Shown here in pieces: positions 12,177 to 64,000 of a stretch of DNA of 64,000 nt. A program made the position numbers and the translations under genes. Origin of the DNA: Ylistrum balloti. Its lineage: Eukaryota. Where the stretch lies: NCBI RefSeq assembly GCF_031769215.1, contig NW_026782464.1, forward strand, positions 124,001 through 188,000, in the 5' to 3' direction. The notes beneath the pieces were generated by a model, which saw only the letters and a list, made by a program, of their open reading frames with translations, ran no database searches and was not told where the DNA came from. The stretch's first letter is position 1. The number at the start of each line of letters is the position of its first letter.

Positions 12177-12330
12177 NNNNNNNNNNNNNNNNNNNNNNNN
12201 NNNNNNNNNNNNNNNNNNNNNNNNNNNNNNNNNNNNNNNNNNNNNNNNNNNNNNNNNNNNNNNNNNNNNNNNNNNNNNNNNNNNNNNNNNNNNNNNNNNN
12301 NNNNNNNNNNNNNNNNNNNNNNNNNNNNNN
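12177..12330. other. Assembly gap (154 N)
   Basis: Run of N in the sequence. Confidence 1.
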
Positions 12331-28084: not shown

Positions 28085-30600
28085 TTACAGAGATACAATT
28101 GCTGGAGAGTCGGCTTCCCTCTTCCTTAGAGATACAATTGCTGGAGACTCAGCTTCTCTCTTCCTCACAGATACAATTGCTGGAGACTCGGCTTCCCTCT
28201 TTTTCAGAGATACAATTGCTGGAGACTCGGCTTCCCTCTTCCTCACAGATACAATTGCTGGAGACTCGGCTTCCCTTTTCCTCACAGATACAATTGCTGG
28301 AGACTCGGCTTCCCTCTTCCTCACAGATACAATTGCTGGAGAGTCGACTTCCCTCTTCCTAAGAGATACAATTGCCGGAGACTCCGCTTCCCTCTTCTTC
28401 AGAGACACAATTGCTGGAGACTCGGCTTCCCTCTTTTTCAGAGATACAATTGCTGGAGAGTCGGCTTCCCTCTTCCTTAGAGATACAATTGCTGGAGACT
28501 CGGCTTCCCTCTTCCTCACAGATACAATTGCTGGAGACTCGGCTTCCCTCTTCTTCAGAGACACAATTGCCGGAGACTCCGCTTCCCTCTTCTTCAGAGA
28601 CACAATTGCTGGAGAGTCGGCTTCCCTCTTCCTCACAGATACAATTGCCGGAGAGTCGGCTTCCCTCTTCCTTACAGATACAATTGCCGGAGAGTCGGCT
28701 TCCCTCTTCCTTAGAGATACAATTGCTGGAGAGTCGGCTTCCCTCTTTCTCACAGATACAATTGCTGGAGAGTCGGCTTCCCTCTTCTTCACAGATACAA
28801 TTGCTGGAGAGTCGGCTTCCCTCTTCCTCACAGATACAATTGCTGGAGAGTCGGCTTCCCTCTTCTTCACAGATACAATTGCTGGAGAGTCGGCTTCCCT
28901 CTTCTTCACCGATACAATTGCTGGAGACTCCGCTTCCCTCTTCTTCAGAGACACAATTGCTGGAGACTCGGCTTCCCTCTTCTTCAGAGACACAATTGCT
29001 GGAGACTCGGCTTCCCTCTTCTTCAGAGATACAATTGCTTCTCTTTTCTTCAGAGACACAATTGCTGGAGACTCGGCTTCCCTCTTCTTCAGAGATACAA
29101 TTGCTGGAGAGTCGGCTTCCCTCTTCTTCACCGATACAATTGCTGGAGACCCGGCTTCCCTCTTCTTCAGAGACACAATTGCTGGAGACTCGGCTTCCCT
29201 TTTCTTCAGAGACACAATTGCTGGAGACTCGGCTTCCCTCTTCTTCAGAGATACAATTGCTGGAGAGTCGGCTTCCCTCTTCTTCACAGATACAATTGCT
29301 GGAGAGTCGGCTTCCCTCTTCCTCACAGATACAATTGCTGGAGAGTCGGCTTCCCTCTTCTTCAGAGATACAATTGCTGGAGAGTCGGCTTCCCTCTTCC
29401 TCACCGATACAATTGCCGGAGACTCCGCTTCCCTCTTCCTCACCGATACAATTGCCGGAGACTCCGCTTCCCTCTTCTTCAGAGACACAATTGCTGGAGA
29501 GTCGGCTTCCCTCTTCTTCAGAGACACAATTGCCGGAGACTCCGCTTCCCTCTTCTTCAGAGACACAATTGCTGGAGACTCGGCTTCCCTTTTCTTCAGA
29601 GACACAATTGCCGGAGAGTCGGCTTCCCTCTTCCTCAAAGACACAATTGCCGGAGACTCCGCTTCCCTCTTCTTCAGAGACACAATTGCCGGAGACTCCG
29701 CTTCCCTCTTCTTCAGAGACACAATTGCTGGAGAGTCTGCTTCCCTCTTCCTCAAAGATACAATTGCCGGAGAGTCGGCTTCCCTCTTCCTTAGAGATAC
29801 AATTGCCGGAGACTCCGCTTCCCTCTTCTTCAGAGACACAATTGCTGGAGAGTCGGCTTCCCTCTTCTTCAGAGACACAATTGCCGGAGACTCCGCTTCC
29901 CTCTTCTTCAGAGACACAATTGCTGGAGAGTCGGCTTCCCTCTTCCTCAAAGACACAATTGCCGGAGACTCCGCTTCCCTCTTCTTCAGAGACACAATTG
30001 CTGGAGAGTCGGCTTCCCTCTTCCTCAAAGACACAATTGCCGGAGACTCCGCTTCCCTTTTCTTCAGAGACACAATTGCCGGAGAGTCGGCTTCCCTCTT
30101 CTTCAGAGATACAATTGCCGGAGACTCCGCTTCCCTCTTCTTCAGAGACACAATTGCTGGAGACTCGGCTTCCCTTTTCTTCAGAGATACAATTGCCGGA
30201 GAGTCGGCTTCCCTCTTCCTCAAAGACACAATTGCCGGAGACTCCGCTTCCCTCTTCTTCAGAGATACAATTGCTGGAGACTCGGCTTCCCTCTTCCTCA
30301 AAGATACAATTGCTGGAGACTCGGCTTCCCTTTTCTTCAGAGACACAATTGCTGGAGACTCGGCCTCTCGCTTCTTCAGAGATGCACCCTGAGGGGCTGT
30401 TAACGCTATTGAAAATAAATCACAGACTGTAATTTCATTGCAATTAAAATATGTTTCAAACTTGATCAGACAATAATTAAATTGAATGATTGAATTATTT
30501 GGCTCTATCAGACTGACATTATGTTAAATAAGAATGTAAGAGTAAGCTTACCTAGATTAATCAAACACAGCATGACCACTATTGAAATCCACTGTCTCAT
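28085..30600 (-). CDS. 789-aa secreted multi-copy peptide precursor: signal peptide + 58 EA(E/D)SPAIVS(L/V)-type decapeptides + one EAIVSL, separated by KKR/RKR
   Basis: Coding exon 30600-30552 (MRQWISIVVMLCLINL+G, donor GTAAGC) splices in phase 1 to the acceptor ttttcaatag at 30406. This gives MRQWISIVVMLCLINLALTAPQGASLKKREAESPAIVSL..., and exon 30405-28085 completes 2370 nt. The stop TAA falls exactly where the next KKR would start. Unit variants are silent or conservative (K/R, D/E, L/V) in this frame. Confidence 0.9.
28088..30380. repeat. Coding tandem repeat, 39-bp unit (+ strand consensus AGAGATACAATTGCTGGAGACTCGGCTTCCCTCTTCTTC), about 59 units
   Basis: Read directly. One unit carries an in-frame 12-bp deletion near 29040. 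Confidence 0.97.
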
Positions 30601-31919
30601 ATTTGATGTTTCTGAAACAATACAAAACCTAATGATATATCACGTGTTGGAATTATGATTATACTACATCATCAGTGCACAATCAAACAATAATATGAAT
30701 TTATACAACCTGACAATGCGTTAGATAACAGACTGGTAATGCCCAACGTGACCCCGTTTTCTGCTTGTCCAACCCAACCCCACGTGGTCTCATACATAAT
30801 ACTTAATACCGTCTCGTTTTACACCATATTTAAGTGTATGATTCACTACAGTTTTGACGTTTTCTAATCATAAGAGATATTCGGCTATGAAAACAAATCC
30901 TATTTACATGTGAAAAACACTCGTTTACTGTTACACAACATCATGAAGTAAATAGAATTCACGACGATGATTTGTTAAGATGATAGCTACTATATCTTAT
31001 AAAGTGCATGTTGTCATTGCTATCATGTTGCTGATGTACTATTTTACAGTTGTTACATGAGTTTTTCTTTTCGCCTGGTCTAATGACATATGTCTGTAGC
31101 TATGAGATTTAGTCGATCTTGTATTCTTTCCTATAGAATTAAAGCTATTTGAAAGGTTAAATGAATGCCTCATATTCGAGGAAACATTCATCTATGCCCA
31201 CGAAATAATAATAATATGCATTATCCATATAGAGCTCTATACTGCTAAAATGTCACCTATAAAAAAAACTCTTTACGAGCCATGTTTAAAAAAAACTTAT
31301 TTCTACTATAAAATATACAAAAGTCATCACGTATACATCTATGGTAATACAAAGAAGTATCGAATAAATTTCGGAAGAGTCAAATACTAGCACAAACTAA
31401 TTAAAACACAGTTAAAACACTGTCTAGATCACATGCACTTTTGAAGAGATGCGTTTTCAGAGTGAGAACTTGGCAGCTGATAGCAGGGATCTTACCACTG
31501 TGATACCGTTATGTTATTTATTCTAGACTCATAAAATGTAGAGATTAAAATGTCAATGTTTCTTTCAAAAAAGAATTATTATTATTATAAAGTATTATTT
31601 ATGCTTATAGAATTTAAAATGGCAGTTTAACACAAGGGGAAATAATCCAGTGTATTTCGACTTGTCTTAGTCGCCTCTTGGGCTTCAATGTTTAGGTCCT
31701 TAATAATAATGAAGAGAGGAATAAGGCCGAAACTTTTGTAATGTGGAGTTTGATTCACTATTTGGCTCTATGTAACCTTTCCTTTTCTTATGTATGTTCC
31801 ATCATAGCCGCCTGTGTGGGTATACATTCATTTGTATACATGGAACACAGTTTCACTTAAAATTCAATAGATTAAGAAAACCTAATAAAACCATGTTTAG
31901 AATAATAAATTATGTAGCA

Positions 31920-32150
31920 ATATTTGGTGAGATTTTGAAGCTATTTGGTTCATTTGCAACTATATTTATTTCTACTGGGCACTATGGGTTACGTTCCCTT
32001 AGCGCTAGTCGAGGCGTGGGCACGTGAGCACACAGGTAAGAATGGGGTCAGTCATGGATGAGTGATTTTATAGACTTGGACTTGGAGACCCGTGTAGCCT
32101 TGGTTATATAGGTATCTATTGTAGCCTTCATATATGTTACACATCTGCTA
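31920..32150 (-). repeat. Dispersed repeat, copy 2, inside intron 1 of the peptide-precursor gene
   Basis: Reverse-complement match to about 21460-21650. Confidence 0.7.
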
Positions 32151-33366
32151 GTCCTTAATAGTACGGTGCATATCGGGCTCATTTTGAATTTAAATCCCTG
32201 ATAGCATAAATTCAGGCCAACAATATCTGTTCAATAAAACACATCACATTTTATTATGTGAGTGCATATAGTCAGTTATTTCAAAGGACGCGCCAGTAAA
32301 ACCCCTGTAGTTTATCTGTACAGGTGTGAACTATAGTCATCTCTTTAGTGGGCTAATTTCTCGTCGTCCGATTCTATGTCCTTTATGATTTCATACACTA
32401 CTACAGTCAATATACGAAGAAATCATCTGACACCCCTGACTTTAGTTAAAACAAATAAAACTGCGAGAAGATCTAGAATTTGAAAATACATTTGAACAGA
32501 ACAATTGAATATTATTGAAGCAATTAAAATTTGAAAATTAACAACTGAAAATTCTTGATCAAGGATTCGGATCGGAAGGGATCTACAACATCTACTGATA
32601 ACTATATCTTAAATTAACACAGTACATTAACGAAAAAAAGAAAAATGATTAGAAATCGATTAACCACAGTCACTTGTAAAATTACATTTTCTCTACTATG
32701 GCAATACTTATATACAATGCAAATACATAGTACATCTCTAATTAATTGAACTCGTACATTTTATTTTTCACTAAGATTTATGACTAACGTTTATAAATAG
32801 CAGTCAATAAGTTAATAGTTTTGTTTACAAAATGATAGAACAATGAGAGTAATACAGCAGAAATACAAATAAAATTTCCTTTCTGACTGTATGAGATTTT
32901 AGATGGTTCATTGAGAGACAATCTCTCTACATGTATAATAAATATGATGACGTGCGGCACTGTGGAAACAAAACACTTTAAATTATGAGTGTATCAAACT
33001 ATTCAGTCTGTATCTTATACACATATACGTGTTTGACCATAAATTTAGCTGTACTCTTATATATTTAGAAAATAGATAAACCTTATTCCACATTTATCTA
33101 TGTCATTTTAAAATGTATATCAGCTACGATAGAATCGCACAATTGTGCGATAGAACATGTGCGGTAGCTTATTTTGCCCTGTTTCCCTATCTTGTGGGAA
33201 ATTCTGAATAACTAGCTAGAACTACTAGTAGAGAAAATAAACAGGGTCGTTATTCAATACAAATGTTGATAAATGAAAGTTGAAAAAAAAACCCTTGTAT
33301 ATCTTAATCACTTAAAAAACAATTGTAATCAATTGTGAAAATTAAGAAAGCAATTTTTTTTCTTAC

Positions 33367-33475
33367 CTCTTCACGTGGATGCAGCTGATACAGTTGTTGC
33401 CTTAAAGAGGAGCTTTACAGTTGGTAAATAAGAGAGGATTTACTGATTAAACCCCGTTCGGAGTCAGCTTTTATA
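33367..33475 (-). promoter_or_regulatory. TATA box + Initiator core promoter and non-coding first exon of the peptide-precursor gene
   Basis: Minus-strand CCTATAAAAG has its first T at 33475. The Inr TCAGT has its A at 33444, giving the canonical -31 spacing. A 78-nt exon without an ATG ends at donor GAG|GTAAGA (33366). It would splice to the acceptor ttgtttcag at 30612, 11 nt before the ATG. Confidence 0.7.
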
Positions 33476-37300: not shown

Positions 37301-37360
37301 CAGGATTTACATGGCGGGTGTCATAGATGAAACAGAAGACGCTTACTATTCCGGAACAAA
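37301..37360 (+). repeat. Short fragment of a dispersed repeat family (inverted partner at 39641-39687)
   Basis: AGGATTTACATGGCGGGTGTCATAGATGAAACAGAAGACGCTTAC is similar to minus-strand AGGATTTACATGATGGGTGTCGTCGATGCAGAAGCAGACGCTTAC in PHM intron 4. Confidence 0.55.
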
Positions 37361-37791
37361 TGGTCTTATTCTTGTACTTTTTCAGGAGCCTCCGTTGAGT
37401 CTTCCTTTTATTCCTAGTTTTCCATGCGTTCATTGATTTTGTGTTGTATCTATGATTTCGTTAACAAATATGTATTTTTTTTATATTGTTTTGCTCCTTT
37501 CTTCACTGCGAAATTTCGTGACCTGAGCAATAGAGTTAATAAACAATGCGTGTATTATAAACAGATACAAATGGCATTTCTTATACCGAACGCAGTCAAT
37601 CAAAACATTTTCATAACAACAATGGAATATTTCTGTTTAGTGGTACGAGGGGCGTGTCAAATTTTATTTCTAAGAAAACAGCTTCCAAAACAATATCATG
37701 TCCATGATAATAAGGGCAAAGGGGAGGAGCTAGCTTTATCAGTACAAGTTTTCTCTGTGTGACAACGCATCAGTAATCAGATTACGACAAG

Positions 37792-40700
37792 ATGCTCACC
37801 AGTGTTGTTGTGTTCGTGGTGTCTGTGTGTGCTGGTTTAGTAATAGGTCTAACTACAACACGTACAGATGACCAGCATAACATTAAACATGAAGTTTATT
37901 ACAAGCATATGAAATTACCACTGAGTACTTTTGTCGGAGAAAAGGTAAGGTCACCGACGGATATCGATATAGACCTTAATCCGTGGTTCACCATCACCGT
38001 TCTGTTTCCTTATTATTTATCCTTTGACTAAATATTGCAACTTATTTAATCTTATTTAATATAGAGAAATTTAGACACGAGTATTGAAGAAATGCATGAT
38101 ATTGGTTCTGAATCTTCTGAATTTTTTTTTACAGAAAATTGAATATGGCTGTTCGGCTTTCCCGCTCAAAGCAGACGAATATATAAGTAAGTAATACTAG
38201 TATTCAATACGTTACTGTGACACATCCTTAATAGTTCACATATCTATATTGTTGTTGATTTTCTTGACCTCACGTTCGATGATCAATCACATAATTGATA
38301 TAGATATAGGGAGTTATTATGGTACATCGTCTACATCACCTGATTGGAATATTGCTACAAATCCTCCTTATGTACAAATAAGCCTTATACACAAGTCTCG
38401 TGAGAAAATATATCGTTCGTTTCGCTTTATTTCATTTCATGTTATTTCATGTGGCAACTTTATATAAAGCTTGCTTGCTTGGCTTAGTGGTAGAACTCGG
38501 CTTATTATGCCGGAGTTCTATGTCCGATTTCTGTCGGGGGACCCAGCAGAAGTGTGTATTTTCCCCTGTTTTTTTTTCCATTTTGTACAATAAAACAAAT
38601 CAAACAACTGTGACCAATGATTATATACACTTTTCTTTTTTTACCGATGTTGTTCTTTACGTTTCTGTCTTCCTCACCTATCTCTTGGTATGGTTATTTA
38701 CAGCTGAATATTTGCCAATCGGAAAACGTAACGATTTGTACCACATCACCGTGAGTGTGTGTGACACTCCCTACGATAAGTCGCCTATTTGGTAAGATGG
38801 AAAAAGTTACAATCATAGAAATAAAGATAAAATCACCAACACTGATATAATATATCCATGTTAAGGATGGTAGTGGTAGTATGCACATGTATGGCTAAAA
38901 TCAGATTCCTGTTTAACGAAAAGAAAATTAATTATACAATATTTATAGATATTAATGAGAATCGACGTAATAACGTTATTTATAACGTATTACAATGTTG
39001 TTTTATTTTATTCCTTGCTCGCGTTTTATATCTAAATGAAGGAAAGTCAGTGCTTTGATATTGCCTGTTTTACACTGTCAAATTTATGTTTTATCAGACC
39101 AGACACTTCTTTTTACATATATGTATTTACGCATTTGTTTGAAGTAGGACAGAACATGATATTAAATTCATCAATTGAAAAAACATTCTGAATAAAAGGT
39201 AAGACAAAGCTATGATTATATAGATAATTATAGACAGACAATTACAACAAACTAATTTTCAATGAATGTACCACACCCTTACTGTAGATAATTATGACAA
39301 TAAGATAAATAGAAGAAAATGAATTTAATGCATAACTGGTATATGTATTTTAGGGAATGCATCAACCCGAGTCATGTTTGTAAAAATTCGAAAAGAGAAT
39401 TCCTGTATTCCTGGACGAATGGTGCCCCGGGATGGACTTTACCTGAAGGTTAGTCTCTAATCAACTGAAAATCATATTGTAATCAGTCATTCGGTTTAGC
39501 CTCCACAGAAATCTTGAAGTCCTTGTCAACAGACTCTTAATTCTTACTCAAATTCGATTAAACTAGGGGATATGAAAGAGGATATGAATAAAAACAGATT
39601 TCCATGAAGGCTCTTGGAAACTAACAAAGGGATTCGGTAGGTAAGCGTCTGCTTCTGCATCGACGACACCCATCATGTAAATCCTAGTCACCCCAAGTAA
39701 GGGATCAATGCCATATTCCCAACTGAGAACAAGAGAACCATAGGGGCGTACCACTGTATATCAAACATTTTCAGCTCCATTTCTCAATAGCATTGTCTCC
39801 ACCCCAGTATGGTATATCTTCATCAGAAAACAATTGTTATTTGACTCTTTAATCTTTCATCTATTTATTTACATACATACTGAAGTCACATTGTATGTGT
39901 CCTCACAGGTACGGGCATATATACTGGTAATAGATCCAAATACGTAATAATGCAAGTCCACGGAAGAGACGACATCTCAGGTAGGTGCAGTCTTCGATCG
40001 TTTGATACAGCTTACTATGTGAGAGAGAGACAAGGAGATTTGTTATTCCTGCATCACTGTCAATAAAAAGTTAACGAACTTTAATCCTGATTGGAAATCT
40101 TACATATTTTTTAGGTGATTATCAAACTTGTATACGTCTCCGGATACACAGTAAAACAGTAACAGAGTATAGACCAAGCAATCTGTTATTCATATCATTA
40201 ACAGTTCAATATTCAATGAAAAAAAATTTGTTTGCAAATGAGCCATTGGTTTTGTTATTCGCAAGATGAATTATAATGACATATCAGTTTTCATATATTT
40301 CCTTCTACTGACGTATGTAGTGCATGTTTTTCCCCTGATATCAATTTACTAATATACGTTCATATCTGTTATGTTTGAGTTCCAAGTCTATATATCATTT
40401 TTATTCTCCCTGTCAGATGAACGTGTCAAAGACTTTGCACACATGCGTTTGAAAATCCAAACCACCAGGTATATATAAGAATCACTGTAATGCAAAAATC
40501 AACAGGTCAAAACAACTTTGAGAGGAATTCATAATAATTTCAATAGCCTAGATAAACTGTAAGTCTTTACGATATTTATCAAGTGTGAAAGATTACCTTT
40601 ATTGTTATTATTAATTATAATATTTATTAGGAACATTGACAAATGTATTGTCTTTTATATACCAGACCTCAAGTAGCAGCTGCTGTTAGCATGTACACCG

Positions 40701-43700
40701 GATACGGTTATATTCCTCCCCATGTAGATAGTAAGTATATGTAGGTAATGTTTGTATACCTATATTGGTGTCTTTTGTTATATATATCATCTCATGACGT
40801 TATAATCATTATGTCATTTTCTAATTATTTACTAAGGAGAATGCTTCGATTTTTTAAGTCAGTCAAAAGACGTCTTTGCTGTAGTCGATATATTATTTGA
40901 AAGAGTATAAATGTATTTAAAAAACTACACGTAGTTATATTTAGAATGAGAAATTAGGATGAGTTACTATTCTTGAGACTATAATGTTTTACTTGTAGAT
41001 TTCACAGTTGATACAGCATGTGTATGGAACAAGACGACACCTGTGCCCATCCTAGCTTACGGAATACATACACACACCAGGGGTCAGTACACAAATGCTG
41101 AGTGACCTTGTCATAATTGTCAAGCATGCATACATGATTTCATTACTTATATTAATACAGAAGATGATATCATTCTCAGACCACTTCAGTAAAGTTAATT
41201 CTGAATTGAGATCACCTGACATTTTGTCACATATCCATAACCCATCATATCTTTCTTTTGAACTTGTCATTGTATCTTTATTTCATTTTCTTTCTTCTCA
41301 TTTTTTAAAAAAAAATCTTGTTTTGTTTTTGTTTCTCGCATATCTTTTGATTTCATGAAAATTATTCTTGGCTATGGTTATAAATGTACTAGTGAGGTTC
41401 TACAAACATATTCAAATCGAAAAAAGGGCTCATTTTGATTTTATTGGATACAATGTAAACGACATCTATAATTGTGATCTCTTTTTTATTAGGTTTGGCG
41501 CTATCTGGTTACATTGTCCGAGATGGTCAGTGGATCGAGATTGGACGCGGTGACCCATTATATCCATTGGTGAGTAAAGTCACCTTTTCTCTTTCATAAC
41601 ACCAACTACAACTGTCAAAATAAATCATGCATGGTAGAATATTTAGGTTGATGAAAACCTATGATAAAAATCTCATCTGTAAACAACCTTCTTTCCAAAG
41701 ACTTAACCGATATTTAACATGGGTTAGTAAGATAACTCTTATACAATATGAATATTAAGTATCAAATTAAACACAGCAGGATTTCTTAGGTAATATCGTT
41801 TGAAATAGTAGGCACTTTCTAAGCATTGTTTTTCATTAGGAGATGGAAATCGTACTCAATGTCGTTTTCATTACAAAACGTACAAATCCTCTGGAGATAT
41901 CTCTTATTCATTAGTTGCATTAATTGATATATTCGTTTTGTTCCACTGTAAAGTAAACGACGAAAGGTCATGGAGTACGAGATACCTTCACTTCAGATTT
42001 TTGTGTTAGTCTTTATACTTGTTTATTCACGAATGTTTCTAAATAATATTTTAATTTTATGATACAATTGTGGTAACGCACAACGCAAAAGATAATACGC
42101 GCACATCGGGCTTATATCACGTGCATACCGTCCTCACATCGTCCGCACACATCCGCAATACAGTATCTAGCGCACAGCTGTGCGATAGGATCGCACATTT
42201 CGACTTGGTAAAATGTCTATTATACTGTATTGAAATTAAATGGAAAACTCACCAATTTATAACTAAATAGCGAACAAAAGCGTTTTCAAATTGATCAGTG
42301 ATTATCAAGGTCTTTTTTTAATTCGACAGTTATTCTATCGTATTGTTTCATTCCTCAGAGAATGGTGAGTGGTGTGCTGCGGATATATACGTGAAAGGTC
42401 CTGTTCCGTACCGGCTAGGTCTTCCATGTAGTGTACATGTTTTGTTTACAAAACGATATTTTTAATACAGATGCTTTCCTGACGGTATAAGATTTCAGAT
42501 GATCCGTTACAACTTGACACTGCTGATAGACCTTAGGTCTGCCTTCAAGCCACTCTTTCATTCATTCGAATGGTGGCACGGTTTACGAATTGCAAGGCAC
42601 TTATCAATTATGTGTCGTTTGTACAGTCTTCTTGTTCTTATTGGTATTGACAGCTAATTATTTATGAATATAATTAACCCGTTTTGTCGCTATTCCAGAC
42701 AATGTTTGACATCACAGATCGAAAGATGCGGATTCTGCCTGGAGATATTATCGTAAGTATTGGATGTTTATATTCAAAGCTGAAAAAATTATTGAATAAC
42801 CTAGTCTCATTTTTATCGTTTTAAAACTTATTAAATATCATTATTGCATTTGTTTCTTTTTATTTATTTTTCTCATTGATCTGTTTTATTAATTTACATG
42901 TTCGTTCGTTTATTTATTTATTCATTGATTCATCTAATAACTGTTTTATATGAGAAGCACATCTTTTGAGAGGACATGCATCAACTCAATTGTTCTTATT
43001 TTGATGAGTCGACAGCGACCACAATTACCGCGAATTACTTGACAGCAAATTAAATGTCTGAACATCATGGATATGCATTTGATATGTATGTTGTATAATG
43101 TTTATCAGTTATAGGTATTGTGCATTTCAGGCAACCAGATGCACATACCGGAATACTGACAACACACGAGTCTCCATGGGGTAAGCATACCATTAGGAAG
43201 AGTAAAATTAGAGTGAAAGATTGAAAATCGACGAACCGTAAAATGTTTACATGACACCGCTTAAATTTTACCTTATTCATGTTAATGTTCATGATGGTAT
43301 ATCAATAAGGCTGTAAATCAGAATTTGTACATTCATTGAGGACAACTATCTATAGAGAAATATCGTAAAGTTATGTATATGCCTGTTTTGAGCACATACT
43401 TTTCCTATTTGGTAAATGGTCGTTTCACGTGATATAAGACTGCTATAAATATATAGAATTAGTGTTGTTGCTTCCTTGATGATCAAGGTATATTCGTAGA
43501 TTACTTTTCGTAGTTTTGTGGTTGTAAACCTGATTTACATGGCAATGTCTTCGATAAAACAAAAGGCGCTTTCCCTTGTGAAACATCAAACCTTACTCTT
43601 ATTTTACCGTTCCAATTCCTCCGTTTAAATCTTCTCTTTGTCCATATCTTGTCCTCTCTTTTGTCTATTTGATTTTTTCAACACGTCGGTTGCTTTTGTA

Positions 43701-44176
43701 ATTTTGTATATAACTGTTGTATATTGGTGACGGACCAGTATGTGTTTTAGCTATATACTAATATCAGTTTATACATGACTACTATCATTTTGTAGAGGAC
43801 AAGTGTAAATATGTAGATGGGAAGAAAAGAATGTAGAGGACTAGCGTACATTTCTAATGGACTACAGAGAACCTTTCCAAGGGGCAAGTTTAGATACAGA
43901 AATGTCTTTGAAAATCCCCTGAAATATTACCATTATTTGTCTTTCGCTGTTCTTTAAAGGTTCACCCACGTCAGAGAGATGTGTAATTATTTCGTTTACT
44001 ACGGAGTAACTCCTGACAAAATTGCTTCGACCAAAGCCATCGCATGTGGCGGAAATGCACAGGGGACAGGCTGGGACCAACTGTTTGACAACATTCCAGC
44101 AGACGCTAGTGATCCTACTGGAGACACGGAACAATCCCGTTATGTCAAAAAGTATCATCTTACCAAAAATTACTGA
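37792..44176 (+). CDS. Phm: Monofunctional peptidylglycine alpha-hydroxylating monooxygenase (PHM)-like copper enzyme, 352 aa, 12 exons, signal peptide, no PAL domain
   Basis: Exons: 37792-37944, 38135-38186, 38704-38791, 39354-39448, 39909-39980, 40417-40468, 40666-40730, 40999-41082, 41493-41569, 42699-42752, 43131-43180, 43960-44176. All introns are GT-AG, phases are consistent, and the total is 1059 nt. Motifs are colinear with PAM/PHM: EYGC, LYHITVSVC, FLYSWTNGAPGWTLPEG, SKYVIMQVHG, AYGIHTH, SGYIVRDGQWIEIGR, PGDIIATRC, REMCNY and W..LFDNIP. Confidence 0.9.
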
Positions 44177-45446
44177 AGGGTTGTCCTTTGGTTTCTCCTG
44201 ATTATAGATGGTAGTCACCGATAAATGAAATTCAGAATTTCACAAATAATTATAAAAATAAATCCATTATCTTATTTCTGTGCTACCGATTTGTTTTTAC
44301 TAGTAAATATGTTTTAATTTAACGTGTATTGTGTAATTTAGTTCAAGTCTATAACTTCAGTGATGCGAACACGATTATCATCATTTTGACCTCATTGATC
44401 CTTGAACCCAATGCTCTCCGAAGACATACGTATCTAATGGATCTTAAGTATGCTTGAATTTGTAAAATATTCTGTTCACAATATATCACTTATTTTAATA
44501 AGTAACCTTTTATGTTTTAAGAACAAGCAAAACTTACGGTTTATTTAAATTGTAAACCTGCATACCGGAGAGAATATCTTTTTATTAAATGACTATAAGA
44601 TGAAAAAAAATGAAAACAAAACTGAAATATATCATTTGTCTATCAGATGAAACTAGGAAACAAAACAATTACTGAGTGTAATTAATAGTTTTTTTAAAGA
44701 CAAATCATAAATATATGCAATATGAAAAGAACAAAAATATAGAGACTTGTATACAAAAGAAATAAATGTAATATATAGCAAAAAATGATAATATGTATTA
44801 ACAATGATAATATTTACTAGCGACCGTTCGAGTAAACTTAAGTTCTGCAAGTACACATCTTAATATTTTATCCTAGCGTCATATCCATAATTTCACTGTT
44901 CAATTATTAAACATGTTTACATATGTATATGTCAAGGTATTGCTCTGCACAGCAGTAAAACGCACATGAGATTTCATAAACATTGTGGTAGATCCCTTAT
45001 TCTGTATAGCTTATCTTTTTTCTTACTACAGACGTACCGTTCTCTTTTTATTTGGTGTGATTTCAAGAAATGCCAAATTTGTTATAAGTAGAAATATGCA
45101 TGCTGTTGATAAAATGATTCCTTAGCTAAAAGGTTCCGACGGACGGACGGAAACAAAGTACCCCTGATTTACCGACAGGTGGCTATAGACTATCATCCAA
45201 ATGTTGTATTACATATTTAATAAATTAAATTTGTGGAAACTGCCGTGTTGAACTTAGGCATAAAACCAAGTAGACACAAGGACATTAAATGACCACGCCT
45301 TCTAAACATTCTTAAAAGATTACACATTAAAAATCAAATGTATAAGTATGCAACACAACAGATCCCATTAATATATACAACTATCTAGTTTGATAGTTTA
45401 AAGTTGATATATAACAAGGACATTGATCTTGACAAAATCGTTCGAG

Positions 45447-47024
45447 TTAATGTTCCTGCGAGTTAAACTTCCGAAATATTGCATAACATTCCAAAAACGT
45501 TGTAAATCTAAAGAACACAGAAAATGGTAAAAAAATTGAATATACTAAATTCAAAAGATATTGCGGAAAGTTACTGTGGTGCAATAGCTGTGTACGGGAA
45601 AATTCAGATATAAAGAAACTGTCCGTAAACCAGAAAATAAAGTTGTTTATCATTGTGAATATCAGAACTGATTCAAGTAAGTTTATGTTTGATCGGGGGT
45701 CAGTTTTCCTAAATCGGTTCGCATGTAACAGAAACACCACTTGAAGGTAGTCTTGGAATACGCTGAAGGCATTGGTGAACAGGATGATTTTGGTATTTTG
45801 ATCGTCGGTGACGTCAGCACCAATAGCGATGCTGATATGTGCTAAGAATAAACCAAACGCCGACAGCAAATACAAATATTCCCGAGACTTCAGGCCTTTC
45901 GGTGAACTATCAGGAGTACAGTAATGAGCCAAACAATAGAAACCAGCAAACGTTGCAAGCGCCATCATCACTTTCAATGTTAACTCATATACTTGCGCAA
46001 TATACAGTATGACGTTTCCATCCCCTATATCTAGAACGAGGACAATGTAACACACAACAAGTCCTAGCCCTGTTGTTATGCTCATTGCCAGTGAAAGTAT
46101 TTGTACTAATGTCCGCCTGCCTCTATTTGCCGGATGTTCGATGACATTGAATCCATGCAGAAGGGACGTCTGCTCCGATTCCTGTACGTCGTTTATTCCT
46201 ATATACGTTGGTGATTCATCTTGAGGATTCGCTTCTTGTTTCGGTGACCAAATCTCAAGAAGTATTGTACTGAACAGAAAAACATACTCAACGAAAGCTG
46301 GTCTTAGAAAGGGTAATGACTTTTCTAGAAGCAATGTCATTGTACTGTTGTTTCCTAAACAGGATATCAAGTCAATGTCATCTTCGACTTCTATCAAAAA
46401 TGATCTGGTGTTTTTCATTTGATAGACATACAAGATCACTGATAGATTACAAGTTAAAATCAAAAACATAGCGTAATTCACTAGTGAGCTCTGTTTCAGC
46501 TCGAACGGAGAAAAATAAGAGACGAAAACCATTTCTGAGAATAAAGCTAGGATCAATGTGATATTGAAAACTAATAAAATATTCCAATAAATTCCACCAG
46601 CGAAATTCACGGAACATTCAATCAGTTTTCCTATGAATAACGCACAAGATAATCCCGAGGACAGGCCGAAGATCCACATGAAAACCACCTGAAGTTTTCT
46701 GGTATTCCTGTCATTTCTAGCAGCGACAACTGATTGAAGGCCATATTTCCGTACTTTGTTTCCAATGATACAGAAGATGGATAATGCAGATATCATAATC
46801 ACTAATAGAAGACTAAGAACAAATCCCAATCGAAATTCCGCGTGTTTGGGTATACTTTTAGTGACAGTGAATCCAAAGACAAGTGAAACAAATATCATGA
46901 CAAGAACACGGGACGAGATTACACAGTCATAATACCAAGATCCATGCTGTCGCCTGCGGTATTGTGGACCAGCAAACGGTAGAATGATGGTTGATGTCAA
47001 CAGCTTGCCACACACCGATTCCAT
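45447..47024 (-). CDS. OTOP: Otopetrin-family proton channel, paralog B copy 1 (525 aa, single coding exon)
   Basis: Colinear with paralog A. Motifs FSEMVFV, LTCNLS, PAFVEYVFL, FQDYLQVVFL, INNFIFWFTDSF and PFSVFFRF. The acceptor ttttttgtag lies upstream of the ATG. Confidence 0.85.
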   Translation of the reverse strand: MESVCGKLLTSTIILPFAGPQYRRRQHGSWYYDCVISSRVLVMIFVSLVFGFTVTKSIPKHAEFRLGFVLSLLLVIMISALSIFCIIGNKVRKYGLQSVVAARNDRNTRKLQVVFMWIFGLSSGLSCALFIGKLIECSVNFAGGIYWNILLVFNITLILALFSEMVFVSYFSPFELKQSSLVNYAMFLILTCNLSVILYVYQMKNTRSFLIEVEDDIDLISCLGNNSTMTLLLEKSLPFLRPAFVEYVFLFSTILLEIWSPKQEANPQDESPTYIGINDVQESEQTSLLHGFNVIEHPANRGRRTLVQILSLAMSITTGLGLVVCYIVLVLDIGDGNVILYIAQVYELTLKVMMALATFAGFYCLAHYCTPDSSPKGLKSREYLYLLSAFGLFLAHISIAIGADVTDDQNTKIILFTNAFSVFQDYLQVVFLLHANRFRKTDPRSNINLLESVLIFTMINNFIFWFTDSFFISEFSRTQLLHHSNFPQYLLNLVYSIFLPFSVFFRFTTFLECYAIFRKFNSQEH

Positions 47025-49909: not shown

Positions 49910-50229
49910 GTCTGTATATGTATACAAATCAAAGCATAGTTAATTCTGAATTGAGATCACCTGACATTTTGTCACATATTGATATCCCATCATATCTTTC
50001 TTTTGAACTTGTCATTGTATCTTTATTTCATTTTCTTTCTTCTCATTTTTTTTAACAATAATCTTGTTTTGTTTTTTGGTCTATCTTTTGATTTCATGAA
50101 AATTATTCTTGGTTATGGTTACATATGTACAAGTGGGGTTCTACAAACATATTCATATCGAAAAAATGCTCATTTTTATTTTATTGCATGCAATGTAATA
50201 TTTATAATTGTGATCTCTTTTGATATTAG

Positions 50230-58210: not shown

Positions 58211-59699
58211 AAGGAAATATGATATTTTCCAATTGTCCTGATGGTCACCATAAAACTTCTCTGTAACCTTCATGAACCGATATATATATTAAACTGAAAT
58301 AATAGTCGTATCAATAGTATAGGAGACAAAGCAAGAACATATTTAGATATTTTTGCAATATACATCGAAACACTTGGAGAATGACGACGTTTGAATGTAA
58401 TTCAAACTCAAAATATATTGAAATGTGCTGTAGAAAGGCTAGTGTCTTCTGTTTCACCAGTAACACACGACATATAATCTTAGTCAATCTAAGTAATGTC
58501 ATATTGTAGAATGACAGTCATGAGCAAAGTCATATCTTACCTTTTAATCTCACGACGAAGATAAATATATCCAAATTGATATTGTTGCACAGAGCAGACC
58601 TTCAATATACCCTATAGCTGTGTAACACAGTAATGCTTCGATGCACAACTGTGGAAACCCAACGATAGTTATTTTCATCCGCGTTCGTTTTGAATGACGG
58701 GGTATCAGTTATTGGTGTTACAGACAAAGAACATCCTATATTTACTTCCCGTTTAACGATGACGAAATGTCATATGATTTTCTTGTAAATATTTGAATAA
58801 AAACTCTTTACATAATAGAACATATATGCAGTTCAATGTTGACGGAGAAAATATTCCAATGATGATAAATCATAATGAATATAGAATTATGTTTAAGGTC
58901 TGTTATTTTTGTTTCTTTAATAATTACAACAACATGTTTTGGAGGTGACACCACATCGAAAGTGTGTGTGTAAAGTATCCGTAATAATGAAAAGATAGTT
59001 ACCAAATTATCTCTTGTTAACTGTGTACAGGTACTTTCCTTTATAGTTTGTCAAAAGAAACATTTCGGGGATACAGAGAGTAGTTACAGCATCACAATGT
59101 ATATAGCATTCGCTAGTAAACAGGGAAGTAGAGTTAATTTAAACTTGTTTAATTACAAAAAAACAAAATTATAATTTCAGATGATGAAGATAGAGATAGA
59201 TACATACAAACTTACCTATACTGATATATCAGGTGTGCATGGTATCGGACACTGTATAATTGAGTCTGTCAAAGGTGAGTTTGCTGCTGATGATTCTGTC
59301 ATATATGAATGTGGTAACAATGAATATGTAGATGGCACGCTCAATTGAACGTCCTTCAGATAAATACTCCAACCAACAGGTCTGTATATGTATACAAATC
59401 AAAGCATAGTTAATTCTGAATTGAGATCACCTGACATTTTGTCACATATTGATATCCCATCATATCTTTCTTTTGAACTTGTCATTGTATCTTTATTTCA
59501 TTTTCTTTCTTCTCATTTTTTTTAACAATAATCTTGTTTTGTTTTTTGGTCTATCTTTTGATTTCATGAAAATTATTCTTGGTTATGGTTACATATGTAC
59601 AAGTGGGGTTCTACAAACATATTCATATCGAAAAAATGCTCATTTTTATTTTATTGCATGCAATGTAATATTTATAATTGTGATCTCTTTTGATATTAG

Positions 59700-62600
59700 G
59701 TTTGGCGCTATCTGGTTACATTGTCCGAGATGGTCAGTGGGTCGAGATTGGACGCGGTGAACTATTAAATCCATTGGTGAGTAACGTCACCTTTTTTCTC
59801 TCATTACACCACCAACTACACGTGTCAAAATCAATCATGCATGGTAGAATATTTAAGTTGGTGAAAACGTTGACGCACTTTAACCTATGATAAAAAAATT
59901 CAGATGGTGTCGTGCTGTAAACAACCTTCTTTTCAAAGGTTAAACCGATATTTAACTTGGGTAAGTAAGATAACTCTTATACAATATGAATATTAAGTAT
60001 CAAATTAAACACAGCAGGATTTCTTAGGTAATATCGTTTGAAATAGTAGGCACTTTCTAAGCATTGTTTTTCATTAGGAGATGGAAATCGTTCTCAATGT
60101 CGTTTTCATTACAAAACGTACAAATCCTCTGGAGATATCTCTTATTTATTAGTTGCATTAATTCACATATTCTTTTTGTTCCACTGTAAAGTAAACGACG
60201 AAAGGCCATGGAGTAAGAGATATCTTCACTGAAGCTTTTTGTGTTAGTCTTAATACTTGTATATTCACGAATGTTACTAAATAGTATTTTAATTTTATGT
60301 TACAATTGTGGTTACCCACAACGCACCAAAACCTTCGCGCGCACATCTGGCTTATATCACGTGCACATCCTCTGGAATGCAGTATCTAGCGCACAGCTGT
60401 GCGATAGGATTGCACAATTTCTGCGGCTTGGTAAAAATGGTTGTCTTATAGACTTATTGAAACTTAAATGGAGAACTCACGAATTTATAACTAAAAAGCG
60501 TTTTCAAATTGATCAGTGATTATAAAGGCCTCTGTTTAATTCCTCAGAGAATGGTGAGTGGTGTTCTGCGGATATATACGTGACAGTTCTTGTTCCGTAC
60601 CGGCTAGGTCTTCCATGTAGTGTACATGTTTTGTTTACATAACGATACTTTTTCATACAGAGGTAGTGAAAAGATTTTAGATGATCCGTTGCAACATGAC
60701 ACTGCTGATAGACCTCTCCGTAACTTTCAAGCCACTCTTTCATTCATTCGAATGGTGAAACGGTTCAGATGAAATGCATGCGCCAAACTCTCTAAACTTG
60801 ATTGAATTTCGGGGTTAATGCACCTTTCCATATGGAATTTTGACATTGCTTTCGTATGATTTAGATATTTTTTCAGTCGACTCATATGCTTCACGTTTTA
60901 GAAACTTATTTTAACTGACGAGTTCAAGAAGGACGGAACAGGCGTAAGGTGCAGTTCACTTCATTATTACACTATATTTCATCGAATTTTAAATATGAAT
61001 TGCAAGGCACTTATCAATTATGTGTCATTTGTACAGTCTTCTTGTTTTTATTGGTATCGACAGCTAATTCTTTATGAATGTAATTAACCCGTTTTGTCAC
61101 TATTCCAGACAATGTTTGACATTACAGCTCGAAAGATGCGGATTCTGCCTGGAGATATTATCCTAAGTATTGGATGTTTATATTCAAAGCTGAAAATATT
61201 TATTGAATAACCTAGCCTCATTTTCATCGTGCTTAAAAGGCAGCTAAGGCATTAGCTTAATTTATGTATCGGAAACACTATACAAGATTGTCAAATTTTT
61301 TGTTCAATAGATGTACGAGTTATATCCCTTGATTTTCTTTCAAAAAATAACTAAGAGTTATGTCCCTTGAATTAGAGGGTCATCGGTCATCTGATTGGTC
61401 AATTACTTTCGCGCGGATGCTGAGACCCCTCTCATAACGCAGCCATCTTTAAATGTATCAATACGTAGTTCAATTAGTGGAGTGGATTTGCATTTGTTAT
61501 GCAAAATTTACCCACCCACTTCCACCCTATTGTCTGTTCTATAGTAACGTTATTTATTATCAGCAATTGTGGCGGTTTTTTTGTTAACCCCACATTGGCT
61601 TTTTATTATCATTACTAAAAAATAATCTTTTGTTCATTTTACGGTTTTTGTAACTGTAAGATATGTTTTTAATTTCATAAATGAATACAAAGTCACCCTC
61701 TCTGTAAGGGTGTTTTTTGTTAACCCCACATTGGCTTTTTATTATAATTACTAAAAAATAATCTTTTCTTCATTTTACGGTTTTTGTAACTGTTTTTCAT
61801 CAATAAATACAAAGTCACCCTCTCTGTAAGGGTGGCCTTTTTCATTCATACTCATTGTTGTGTCGTTTCTTGTCGTAGTGTGCAGATACATATCATTATT
61901 GCATTTATTTCGTTTTATTTATTTTTTTCATTAATCTGTTTTATTAATCTACATGTTCGTTAGTTTATTTATTCATTGATTCATCTAATAACTGTTTTAT
62001 ATGAGAAGCACATCTTTTGAGAGGACATGCATCAACTCAATTGTTCTTATTTTGATGAGTCGACAGCGACCACAATTACCGCGAATTACTTGACAGCAAA
62101 TTAAATGTCTGAACATCATGGATATGATTTGATATGTATGTTGTATAATGTTTATCAGTATTAGGTATTGTGCATTTCAGGCAACCAGATGTACTTACCG
62201 GAATACTGGTATCACACATGTCTTAATGGGGTATGCATACCATTAGAAAGAGTAAAAATAGAGTGAAAGATTGAAAATCGACGAGCCGTAAAATGTTTAC
62301 ATGACACCGCTTAAATTTTACCTTATTCATGTTAATGTTCATGATGGTATATCAATAAGGCTGTAAATCAGAATTTGTACATTCATTGAGGACAACTATC
62401 TATAGAGAAATATCGTAAAGTTATGTATATGCCTGTTTTGAGCACATACTTTTCCTATTTGGTAAATGGTCGTTTCACGTGATATAAGACTGCTATAAAT
62501 CTATAGAATGAGTGTTGTTGCTTCCTTGAGGATCGTAGATAACTTTTGTTTTTTTTTATGGTTGTAAACCTGATTTACATGGCGATTTCGTCGATAAAAC

Positions 62601-63232
62601 AAAAGGCGCTTTCCCTTGTGAAACATCAAACCTTATTCTTATTTTACCGCTCCTATACCTCCGTTTAAATCTTCTCTTTGTCCATATCTTGTCCTCTCTT
62701 TTGTCTGTTTGATTTTTTCAACACGTCGGTTGCTTTTGTAGTTTTCCCTTGTGTGTAGTTTTGAGTATTACTGTTGTATATTGGTGACGGACCAATATTT
62801 GCGTTTTAGCTATATACTAATATCAGTGTATGCATGACTACTATCATTTTGTAGAGGACAACTGTAAATATATAGATGGGAAGAAAAGAATGTAGATGAC
62901 TAGCGTACATTTCTAATGGACTACAGAGAACCTTCCTAAGGTACTAGTTTAGATATACAAATGTCTTTAAAAATCCCCTGAAATATTACCATTATTTGTC
63001 TTTATCTGTTCTTTCAAGGTACACCCACGTCAGAGAGATGTGTAATTATTTCGTTTACTACGGAGTAACTGACAAAATTGCTTCGGCCAAAGCCATCGCA
63101 TGTGGCGGAAATGCACAGGGGACAGGCTGGGACCAACTGTTTGACAACATTCCAGCAGACGCTAGTGATCCTACTGGAGACACGGAACAATCCCGTTATG
63201 TCAAAAAGTATCATCTTACCAAAAATTACTGA
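59700..63232 (+). pseudogene. 5'-truncated PHM-like copy 3 (exons 9-12 only)
   Basis: Exons 59700-59776, 61109-61162, 62181-62230 and 63019-63232. It has the same CTAAGT donor mutation (61163). Confidence 0.8.
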
Positions 63233-64000
63233 AGGGTTGTCCTTTGGTTTCTCCTGATTATAGATGGTAGTCACCGATAAATGAAATTCAGAATTTCACA
63301 AATAATTATAAAAATAAATCCATTATCTTATTTCTGTGCTACCGATTTGTTTTTACTAGTAAATATGTTTTAATTTAACGTGTATTGTGTAATTTAGTTC
63401 AAGTCTATAACTTCAGTGATGCGAACACGATTATCATCATTTTGACCTCATTGATCCTTGAACCCAATGCTCTCCGAAGACATACGTATCTAATGGATCT
63501 TAAGTATGCTTGAATTTGTAAAATATTCTGTTCACAATATATCACTTATTTCAATAAGTAACCTTTTATGTTTTAAGAACAAGCATACGGTTTATTTACA
63601 GACCTGCATACCGGATCGAATATCTTTGTCTTTCTATGATGCAATATGAAAACAAAACAATCATGTCTATCAGATGAGGCTAGAGAGTGTAATTAATAGT
63701 TTTTTTTAAAGACAAATCAGTAATATATAAACAAAAATAAGTTTGTATACAAAAGAAATATGTATTAGCAATGATAATATTTACTACCGAACGTACGAGT
63801 AAACTTAAGTCCTACAAGTACACATCTTAATTTTTATCCTAGCGTCATATCCATAATTTCACTGTTCAATTATTAAACATGTTTACATATGTATATGTCA
63901 AGTTATTGCTCTGCACAGCAGTAAAACGCACACGAGATTTCATAAACATTGTGGTAGATCCCTTATTCTGTAAAGCTTCTTTTTTTCTTACTTCAGACGT

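What the first reader, a model, noticed from the sequence alone, without database searches (positions are those of the whole stretch)
37792..44176. Intact PHM-like enzyme with a rewired active site (R240G, Y318F, H107Y in rat numbering)
Seen in sequence and mapped by eye on rat PHMcc: CuM ligands H242, H244 and M314 are kept (IHTH, EMC), as are H108, H172, Q170, Y79 and N316. Four disulfide pairs are retained, and the C47-C186 pair is lost together. However, AYRVHTH becomes AYGIHTH (R240), EMCNLY becomes EMCNYF (Y318) and VHHM becomes LYHI (CuH ligand H107). Established: R240 and Y318 anchor the peptidylglycine carboxylate. All 11 introns and the frame are intact, so this looks like a maintained enzyme with a different substrate or an altered CuH site, not a pseudogene (inference).
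Basis: partly seen in the sequence, partly recalled or inferred. Interest (0 to 1): 0.75.

Follow-up and report, generated by a model that had tools for sequence, protein, structure and literature searches.

The report
Scallop PHM-like copper enzyme, altered pocket
This scallop gene is an intact, conserved relative of the peptide-amidating copper enzyme PHM that lacks the residues PHM uses to grip its normal substrate. It belongs to an unstudied bivalve and brachiopod subfamily that repeatedly sits beside a gene for dozens of copies of one short secreted peptide, which may be its real substrate.

Summary
A 12-exon, 352-aa gene lies at 37792-44176 (+), and all 11 introns are GT-AG. The GenBank annotation of this assembly has a product of the same span and length, with both copper type II monooxygenase Pfam domains.

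In rat PHM numbering, H107 is Y81, R240 is G214 and Y318 is F292. H108, H172, H242, H244, M314, N316, Q170 and four disulfides are kept.

The interpretation needs correcting. R240 is A, S or G in every member found of a subfamily of short secreted PHM-like proteins (two scallops, ark clam, Solemya, Lingula). Y318 varies within it. Only H107Y is specific to this gene, and the ark clam has H107K in parallel.

The gene looks maintained. It keeps 58 of 64 columns that are invariant in its relatives. A degenerating partial duplicate of exons 9-12 has lost conserved residues that the parent still has.

New here: a homologous multi-copy peptide precursor (..P[SA][IM]V[SA]L + KKR, no Gly) also lies within about 5 kb of subfamily members in Pecten maximus and Lingula anatina.

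Most likely this is a copper monooxygenase whose substrate is not a Gly-extended peptide. The neighbouring peptide is a candidate substrate. There are no expression or activity data.

The scan has notes on this same stretch only (s1-258775), none on other DNA.

The parts
37792..37944 (+). Exon 1 (residues 1-51): ATG and a hydrophobic N-terminal signal peptide (MLTSVVVFVVSVCAGLVIGL)
   Evidence: same start as the annotated gene
38135..38186 (+). Exon 2: Y55 and C57, the equivalents of rat Y79 and C81
38704..38791 (+). Exon 3: motif LYHI. Y81 (TAC, 38739-38741) stands at CuH ligand H107. H82 = H108 and C88 = C114
   Evidence: identical in run X1
39354..39448 (+). Exon 4: C100 and C107 (= C126, C131) and the conserved GAPGW motif
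39909..39980 (+). Exon 5: MQVH, with Q145 = Q170 and H147 = H172
40417..40468 (+). Exon 6: F160 at the position of C186 (the lost disulfide partner)
40666..40730 (+). Exon 7 (inter-domain linker region). One synonymous difference from run X1 at 40702
40999..41082 (+). Exon 8: AYGIHTH. G214 (GGA, 41061-41063) stands at R240. H216 = H242, H218 = H244 and C200 = C227
41493..41569 (+). Exon 9: the conserved RDGQWIEIGRGDPLYP block. L246 stands at Q272
42699..42752 (+). Exon 10
43131..43180 (+). Exon 11: C268 = C293
43960..44176 (+). Exon 12: EMCNYF (M288 = M314, C289 = C315, N290 = N316, Y291 = L317, F292 = Y318) and C310 = C334. It also carries the subfamily-specific C-terminal tail W..F.NIP.DASD.TGDTEQ.RY and the stop codon
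44257..44262 (+). AATAAA poly(A) signal, 81 nt after the stop codon
   Evidence: read directly
28085..33475 (-). Head-to-head neighbour: a multi-copy precursor gene. The last exon (28085-30346) encodes 57 matches to the peptide motif (EAESPAIVS[LV] type), separated by KKR or RKR. No peptide ends in Gly
   Evidence: homologues beside other subfamily members
45447..47024 (-). Tail-to-tail neighbour: a single-exon otopetrin gene (525 aa)
   Evidence: PF03189
49938..54969 (+). Partial duplicate 2: exons 9'-12' (50230-50306, 51639-51692, 52712-52761, 53531-53744) plus a second otopetrin copy. The exon 10' donor is GT>CT. There are 11 nonsynonymous and 3 synonymous codon changes and one codon deletion relative to the parent
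59408..64000 (+). Partial duplicate 3: nearly identical to duplicate 2 (5 mismatches in 4573 aligned bases) and cut by the window end

Best explanation
The gene encodes a secreted, monofunctional two-domain copper monooxygenase with the PHM fold. It has no PAL domain and no membrane anchor. It belongs to a PHM-derived subfamily found so far in bivalves and a brachiopod.

The subfamily keeps the oxygen-activating CuM site (H242, H244, M314) and the Q170/H108/H172 electron-transfer side. It has replaced the arginine that salt-bridges the C-terminal glycine carboxylate with a small residue. It also carries a conserved extra C-terminal tail of about 25 residues.

Inference: the enzyme does PHM-type, copper- and ascorbate-dependent C-H hydroxylation on a substrate that is not a Gly-extended peptide. 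This scallop paralogue has additionally changed one CuH ligand (H107Y). That probably gives a two-histidine CuH site, with a nearby tyrosine, and altered or slowed electron transfer.

Shown: gene structure, family membership, residue states, subfamily-wide pattern and signs of purifying selection. Inferred: copper binding, catalysis and substrate class.
For: Gene and family:
- The gene model is intact and identical in span and length to the assembly's annotation, which carries PF01082 and PF03712.
- A local profile of six relatives scores the product at 428 bits over its whole length.
- The relatives pass both Pfam thresholds.
- The subfamily profile hits rat PHMcc at E 1e-51, against 3e-21 for DBH.
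- An AF2 model of the nearest relative (pLDDT 80.5) matches PHM structures best, with TM-scores of 0.61-0.76.

Residue pattern:
- R240 is A, S or G in all members, while five of the six copper ligands (all but H107), N316 and 8 cysteines are invariant.

Constraint:
- The product keeps 58 of 64 columns that are invariant in the other six members. The six changes are conservative.
- Its branch is no longer than its sister's: 0.79 against 0.75.
- Among the 11 nonsynonymous differences from the partial duplicate, the parent keeps the outgroup state at 7 or more, including I235, D241, P242 and Y244. The duplicate keeps it at only 1.
- Against run X1, exons 2-8 (508 bp) show 1 synonymous change, while the introns show 13.

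Other:
- The ark-clam member with H107K occurs as intron-free 1.5-1.6 kb contigs in two public runs. These contigs are consistent with spliced transcripts, so that member is probably transcribed.
- Literature: R240 forms the salt bridge to the substrate, and Y318 and N316 make secondary contacts. H107A still binds 2 Cu (PMC12164859).
Against: - There is no RNA evidence for this gene. The only run found holds DNA.
- H-site variants of rat PHM, including H107A, keep no more than about 5% activity (PMC12164859). Y81 could therefore mean a crippled enzyme.
- No orthologue was found, so conservation of Y81 across species and dN/dS are untested.
- The selection tests are small: 7 against 1 polarised changes, and 1 exonic SNP.
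- The structure model is of a 45%-identical paralogue, not of this protein.
Confidence: 0.55

Rival explanations
1. It is a maintained pseudoenzyme. The PHM fold would serve as a binding or chaperone protein, for example for the neighbouring peptides or for copper, without hydroxylase activity. Loss of H107 would have disabled CuH electron transfer.
For: H107A, H108A and H172A variants of rat PHM keep no more than about 5% activity (PMC12164859). Two lineages of the subfamily lost H107 independently (Y here, K in the ark clam). That fits relaxed need for a full CuH site. The fold residues and disulfides are kept.
Against: All three CuM ligands, H108, H172, Q170 and N316 are strictly kept, although a mere binding protein would not need them. 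H107A still binds two coppers, and any two histidines suffice for Cu(I).
Confidence: 0.25
2. It is a non-functional or decaying gene copy that merely looks intact, such as a silent young paralogue.
For: No RNA run was found. The locus is dynamic: the 3' half of the gene was duplicated twice, and those copies are degenerating.
Against: The duplication from the P0001/P0014 lineage predates the Pecten-Mizuhopecten split, since the branch is about 0.8 substitutions per site. Even so, all 12 exons, 22 splice sites and 58 of 64 invariant columns are intact. The true pseudo-copies beside it show what decay looks like: a broken donor and losses at invariant positions.
Confidence: 0.1
3. It is an ordinary peptidylglycine alpha-hydroxylating monooxygenase that amidates Gly-extended neuropeptides, as public names of its relatives suggest ('probable PHM 1', 'PAM A-like').
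For: PHM is by far the closest solved relative. NCBI names of the relatives say PHM or PAM.
Against: The carboxylate anchor R240 is missing in the whole subfamily. Y318 and H107 are missing in this gene. Q272 is not kept. The public names are similarity-based, not tested.
Confidence: 0.05

Closest known systems
PHM catalytic core of rat PAM (PHMcc; PDB 1PHM, 1OPM, 1SDW)
   Same: Two beta-sandwich domains. The CuM ligands H242, H244 and M314 are kept, as are H108, H172, Q170, N316 and four of the five disulfides. It is the best sequence match (E 1e-51 to the subfamily profile) and the best fold match.
   Different: R240 is G, Y318 is F, H107 is Y and Q272 is L. The C47-C186 disulfide is absent. 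There is an extra conserved C-terminal tail (..ASD.xGDT[DE]Q.RY). There is no PAL domain, transmembrane segment or cytosolic domain.
Monofunctional soluble PHMs of arthropods and nematodes (Drosophila PHM, scorpion PHMm)
   Same: The architecture matches: a signal peptide plus a single PHM core of about 350 aa, encoded by a separate gene. PHMm is 345-350 aa (PMC6669573).
   Different: Those enzymes are reported to keep all catalytic and metal-binding residues (PMC6669573). This subfamily lacks the substrate-anchoring arginine.
Rat PHM H-site variants H107A, H108A and H172A (PDB 5WJA, 6ALV, 6ALA)
   Same: One CuH histidine is missing, as in Y81 here and K in the ark clam.
   Different: Those are laboratory mutants with no more than about 5% activity that still bind 2 Cu (PMC12164859). 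Here the change is natural, is a tyrosine, and lies in a protein with a different substrate pocket.
Dopamine beta-hydroxylase, tyramine beta-hydroxylase and MOXD1
   Same: Same catalytic core and copper ligands. Their substrates are not anchored by a C-terminal carboxylate (my own knowledge, not tested here).
   Different: The sequence match is much weaker (E 3e-21 against 1e-51). A 352-aa product has no room for the DOMON and dimerisation domains.
Plant BURP-domain peptide cyclases and fungal Kex2-processed repeat-peptide (dikaritin-type) RiPP systems
   Same: This is an analogy for the novel reading only. In those systems a copper or oxidative enzyme is genetically coupled to a precursor that carries many copies of a short core peptide between dibasic sites. 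The review PMC12164859 draws mechanistic parallels between PHM and BURP cyclases.
   Different: The folds and kingdoms are unrelated. No chemistry is known for the animal pair.

Membership tests
[quoted passage not shown] | Both Pfam domains detected in the product | tested here: met
   A precomputed Pfam record for the 352-aa product annotated at exactly these coordinates lists both families unmarked, meaning E <= 1e-5. Relatives pass the gathering scores. A local subfamily profile scores the product at 428 bits. Single exons alone hit nothing.
[quoted passage not shown] | CuM ligands: two His and one Met (H242, H244, M314) | tested here: met
   H216, H218 and M288.
[quoted passage not shown] | CuH ligands: three His (H107, H108, H172) | tested here: not met
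   Y81 replaces H107. H82 and H147 are kept.
Peptidylglycine alpha-hydroxylating monooxygenase (EC 1.14.17.3) | Arginine (R240) that salt-bridges the C-terminal Gly carboxylate | tested here: not met
   G214 here, and A, S or G in all subfamily members. The role of R240 is taken from PMC12164859.
Peptidylglycine alpha-hydroxylating monooxygenase (EC 1.14.17.3) | Secondary substrate contacts Y318 and N316 | tested here: not met
   N290 is kept but F292 replaces Y318. A tyrosine sits one position earlier, at Y291.
Peptidylglycine alpha-hydroxylating monooxygenase (EC 1.14.17.3) | Hydroxylation of Gly-extended peptides | not testable with these tools
   This needs an enzyme assay.
Lophotrochozoan short PHM-like subfamily (defined here: P0001, P0014, P0010, P0015, P0016, P0003) | Size of about 330-350 aa, a signal peptide, a small residue at position 240, and the conserved C-terminal tail W..F...P..[AS][ST][DE]..G[DN]T[DE]Q | tested here: met
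   Full-length alignment at 38-45% identity, with 58 of 64 invariant columns kept and the tail present. The product groups inside the subfamily, sister to the scallop pair, with 95/96 support.
Lophotrochozoan short PHM-like subfamily | 12-exon gene structure with shared intron positions | tested here: met
   Exon boundaries of P0014 on L001 and P0001 on L002 correspond one-to-one with the window's exons.
DBH / MOXD1 type | N-terminal DOMON domain and a C-terminal dimerisation region | tested here: not met
   The 352-aa product consists of a signal peptide, the catalytic core and a short tail. Pfam lists only the two core domains. The match to DBH is far weaker than the match to PHM.

The most novel reading that the evidence does not exclude
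The PHM-like subfamily and the multi-copy '..P[SA][IM]V[SA]L + KKR' precursor form an ancient enzyme-substrate gene pair, kept adjacent since before bivalves and brachiopods split. The copper enzyme would install a so far undescribed oxidative modification on these non-Gly peptides, for example a side-chain or C-alpha hydroxylation, or a Gly-independent C-terminal cleavage or amidation. That would make it an animal counterpart of RiPP-style precursor-plus-tailoring-enzyme modules.

Support: a precursor homologue lies 4-5.5 kb from a subfamily member at three loci. These are this window (head-to-head), Lingula anatina L009 (head-to-head) and Pecten maximus L001 (tail-to-tail, and a different paralogue).

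Against: no such array lies within 10 kb at the Mizuhopecten, Solemya or Tegillarca loci. There are also no co-expression or chemical data.
Probability: 0.35. Interest if true: 0.88.

Novelty: new variant of a known kind. Interest (0 to 1): 0.66.

Why it matters
PHM/PAM is regarded as the only enzyme that makes peptide amides, and its substrate pocket is among the best understood of any copper enzyme. A conserved animal clade that keeps the oxygen-activating copper site but has discarded the glycine-carboxylate anchor points to a second, unknown PHM-type reaction. The clade is also repeatedly linked to a precursor encoding 57-70 copies of a non-Gly decapeptide. This supplies a concrete candidate substrate, so the question can be tested directly with synthetic peptides and recombinant enzyme. 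The natural H107Y and H107K variants are also natural experiments on how many histidines the electron-transfer copper site really needs.

Tried and rejected
- Exon-by-exon Pfam scan and PDB searches of exons 12, 8 and 3 gave only chance-level matches or none. The exons are too short and too diverged. The family was reached only through the exon-12 search of representatives.
- RNA evidence: the run search returned one run, which proved to hold DNA, so splicing and expression could not be checked.
- Orthologue search: the word searches with P0001 and with profile A1 found only 2 and 5 proteins. None was above 50% identity to this product, so no dN/dS was possible. Neither search nor the exon-12 search returned the window's own annotated 352-aa product. 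Why is unknown, so absence there is weak evidence.
- A word search with the precursor ORF scored nothing, probably because the query is repetitive.
- A literature search for the peptide strings and for the subfamily found nothing relevant.
- A look-up of earlier findings by sequence and by words gave nothing.
- Considered and rejected: that exons 9'-12' downstream are alternative 3' cassettes. They have a broken exon-10 donor and have lost invariant residues.
- Considered and rejected: that the window's gene is the orthologue of P0014/P0001. It is 45% identical to P0001, against 71% between those two. It is also a separate branch with different neighbours.
- Considered and rejected: a register shift at LYHI. 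The H-to-C spacing and the gapless family alignment exclude it.


Full report
**Gene model**

Reading the three forward frames of 37700-44300 and joining them at consensus splice sites gives 12 exons (coordinates under 'parts'). The 11 introns are all GT-AG. The CDS is 1059 nt and the product 352 aa, starting at ATG 37792 and ending at TGA 44174-44176. An AATAAA lies 81 nt after the stop codon.

Three independent checks support the model.
- An exact look-up of the neighbouring otopetrin ORF showed that the window comes from assembly GCA_031769215.1. That assembly's annotation calls a gene of exactly the same span (6385 bp) and product length (352 aa), with Pfam Cu2_monooxygen and Cu2_monoox_C on record.
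- The annotated paralogues in Pecten maximus (P0014 on L001) and Mizuhopecten yessoensis (P0001 on L002) have the same 12 exons, with matching boundaries.
- The product aligns over its full length, essentially without gaps, to six relatives. It scores 428 bits against a profile built from them.

**Handling of the joined product**

The joined product was assembled only inside local scripts, for alignment with fetched proteins. It was never sent to a remote search or fold tool.

**Finding the family**

Single exons hit nothing in Pfam or the PDB. The 71-aa last exon, searched against the 1.84 billion representatives, found P0001 (339 aa), P0003 and P0010, plus some last-exon fragments. Word searches added P0014, P0015 (Lingula anatina) and P0016 (Solemya velum). 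P0010 clusters with a Tegillarca granosa protein.

All full-length members pass both Pfam gathering scores. P0001 matches rat PHMcc at E 1.6e-33 and DBH at 1e-9. The six-member profile matches PHMcc at 1e-51 and DBH at 3e-21. An AF2 model of P0001 (pLDDT 80.5, pTM 0.78) finds PHM structures first, with TM-scores of 0.61-0.76, and DBH next. The family is therefore PHM-derived, not DBH-type.

**Residue mapping**

The full-length chain 5wm0 fixes the numbering: chain index in 1sdw plus 42 gives the rat residue number. This reproduces Y79, C81 and H107/H108.
- Changed: Y81 = H107, G214 = R240, F292 = Y318 (with Y291 = L317).
- Kept: H82, Q145, H147, H216, H218, M288 and N290.
- Eight mature cysteines correspond to four PHM disulfides.
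- F160 stands at C186, and there is no counterpart of C47.
- L246 stands at Q272.

The roles of these residues are taken from PMC12164859. R240 forms the salt bridge to the substrate carboxylate. Y318 and N316 make secondary contacts. H-site single mutants keep no more than about 5% activity yet bind two coppers, and any two histidines bind Cu(I).

**What is specific to this gene and what is not**

Position 240 across the subfamily:

| Residue | Members |
|---|---|
| A | P0001, P0014, P0010 |
| S | P0015, P0016, P0003, and the partial genes on L003 and L005 |
| G | this gene |

No member has arginine there.

Position 318 across the subfamily:

| Residue | Members |
|---|---|
| Y | Lingula, Solemya, ark clam |
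| L | P0001 |
| F | P0014 and this gene |
| H | L003-L005 |

Position 107 is H everywhere except here (Y) and in the ark clam (K). Q272 is not conserved either.

All members share a tail beyond the end of PHMcc: W..F...P..[AS][ST][DE]..G[DN]T[DE]Q. In the P0001 model this tail includes a short predicted helix.

The 'rewired pocket' is therefore the ancestral state of an old subfamily. Only the CuH change is private to this paralogue.

In the tree the product is sister to the P0001/P0014 pair (support 95/96). Its branch (0.79) is no longer than theirs (0.57 + 0.18). The duplication therefore predates the Pecten-Mizuhopecten split, and this copy has not evolved faster.

**Is it maintained?**

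- The product keeps 58 of the 64 columns that are invariant in the other six members. The six exceptions are conservative: F>Y, M>I, V>I, A>G, N>D and D>E.
- The locus supplies an internal control. The segment from intron 8 to beyond the otopetrin gene was tandemly duplicated twice (49938-54969 and 59408-64000). The duplicated exons 9'-12' have a destroyed exon-10 donor (GT>CT), one codon deletion, and 11 nonsynonymous against 3 synonymous codon changes.
- At the differences that can be polarised with the relatives, the parent keeps the conserved state at 7 or more, including I235, D241, P242 and Y244. The duplicate keeps it at one, F282Y.
- Non-coding divergence between parent and duplicate is 6.6%. 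Exon divergence is 4.3%.
- A second individual (DNA run X1) covers exons 2-8 on one contig. It differs at 13 intronic sites and one exonic site (40702, GGA>GGG, synonymous). Y81 and G214 are present in it.
- X1's depth rises from about 11 in the unique part to between about 7 and 43, mostly 18-43, in the duplicated part, apart from one repeat-inflated bin. This fits real extra copies.

These tests are small, but they all point the same way.

**Genomic context**

The gene sits head-to-head, about 4.3 kb away, with a gene on the minus strand. That gene's last exon (28085-30346) encodes EAESPAIVS[LV]-type decapeptides separated by KKR or RKR (57 matches to the peptide motif). None of the peptides ends in Gly.

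A blastn run made only to compare repeats showed that this array matches L001 23237-25978 at about 76% identity. That stretch is a P. maximus gene annotated at 937 aa, with a signal peptide (MKCIWISFVAVVCLTTLGTS) and 69 matches to the peptide motif (EADVPSIVSL-KKR). It lies 5.5 kb downstream of P0014, tail-to-tail.

In Lingula anatina L009, both edges of a 2260-N assembly gap (3098-5357) encode SADEDLPSMVAL-KKR on the minus strand. This lies about 4.5 kb upstream of P0015, head-to-head as in the window. I did not try to fill that gap.

A motif scan finds such arrays only at these three loci among those fetched. Within 10 kb of the Mizuhopecten, Solemya and Tegillarca genes there are none. The Mizuhopecten flank instead holds a 31-bp non-coding satellite.

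A homologous peptide array therefore lies beside three different subfamily genes, in two phyla and two scallop paralogues. This is unlikely to be chance and argues for functional coupling. It does not show an enzyme-substrate relation.

**Mechanism**

The most likely reading is a secreted copper monooxygenase that uses PHM-type chemistry at an intact CuM site, with electrons delivered from a CuH site. In this paralogue the CuH site is reduced to H108 and H172 plus a tyrosine. The substrate is held differently from a C-terminal glycine. I give this 0.55.

The main rival is a selected but catalytically dead binding protein (0.25). A silent, decaying copy (0.10) and a normal amidating PHM (0.05) are less likely.

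The neighbouring peptides as substrate is the most novel reading that the data allow (0.35).

**Limits**

- There is no RNA, protein or activity evidence.
- No orthologue of this paralogue was found.
- No canonical molluscan PHM sequence could be fetched with an id for a rooted tree.
- The fold model is of a relative, not of this protein.

The scan's earlier notes on this window (s1-258770, s1-258775) led me to look at the neighbouring gene. The synteny in Pecten and Lingula was found here.

Noticed in passing
window 28085-33475 (-); L001 23237-26372 (-); L009 2991-5516 (-): Homologous multi-copy precursors lie within about 5 kb of three different PHM-like subfamily genes. The repeated peptides are EAESPAIVS[LV], EADVPSIVSL and SADEDLPSMVAL, each followed by KKR or RKR. 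The loci are in this scallop, Pecten maximus and Lingula anatina. No paper found mentions these peptides.
   Followed up: partly
window 41193-64000: There is a tandem triplication of a unit of about 9.47 kb. The unit carries the 3' half of the PHM-like gene plus a single-exon otopetrin gene (45447-47024 and 54916-56493, minus strand). Copies 2 and 3 differ by only 5 mismatches in 4573 aligned bases. Related otopetrin-like sequence also lies at 10483-11962 and 16212-17691.
   Followed up: partly
window 39530-39729 (intron 4) and 37291-37346: A short repeat pairs 39641-39696 with an inverted copy at 37291-37346. It reaches a depth of about 560 in run X1, against 11 around it. It is probably a high-copy small mobile element.
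   Followed up: no
L003 5332-5415 and 5449-5532: In an unidentified ENA assembly, the exon equivalent to exon 9 of a subfamily member is tandemly duplicated 117 bp apart. Both copies have an open frame.
   Followed up: no
L002 27527-33456: A 31-bp non-coding satellite of at least 6 kb lies 4 kb downstream of the Mizuhopecten paralogue. This is roughly where Pecten maximus has the peptide-precursor gene.
   Followed up: no
L011 5137-8537: Upstream of the Tegillarca subfamily gene lies a 51-bp coding-looking tandem array. It reads KDHDDDCVSETSLYKGT on one strand and KEMSLIHSHHHGPWCPY on the other. It has no dibasic sites and no similarity to the scallop peptides.
   Followed up: no
window 12177-12330: This is a run of 154 N (an assembly gap). 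It was left untouched.
   Followed up: no
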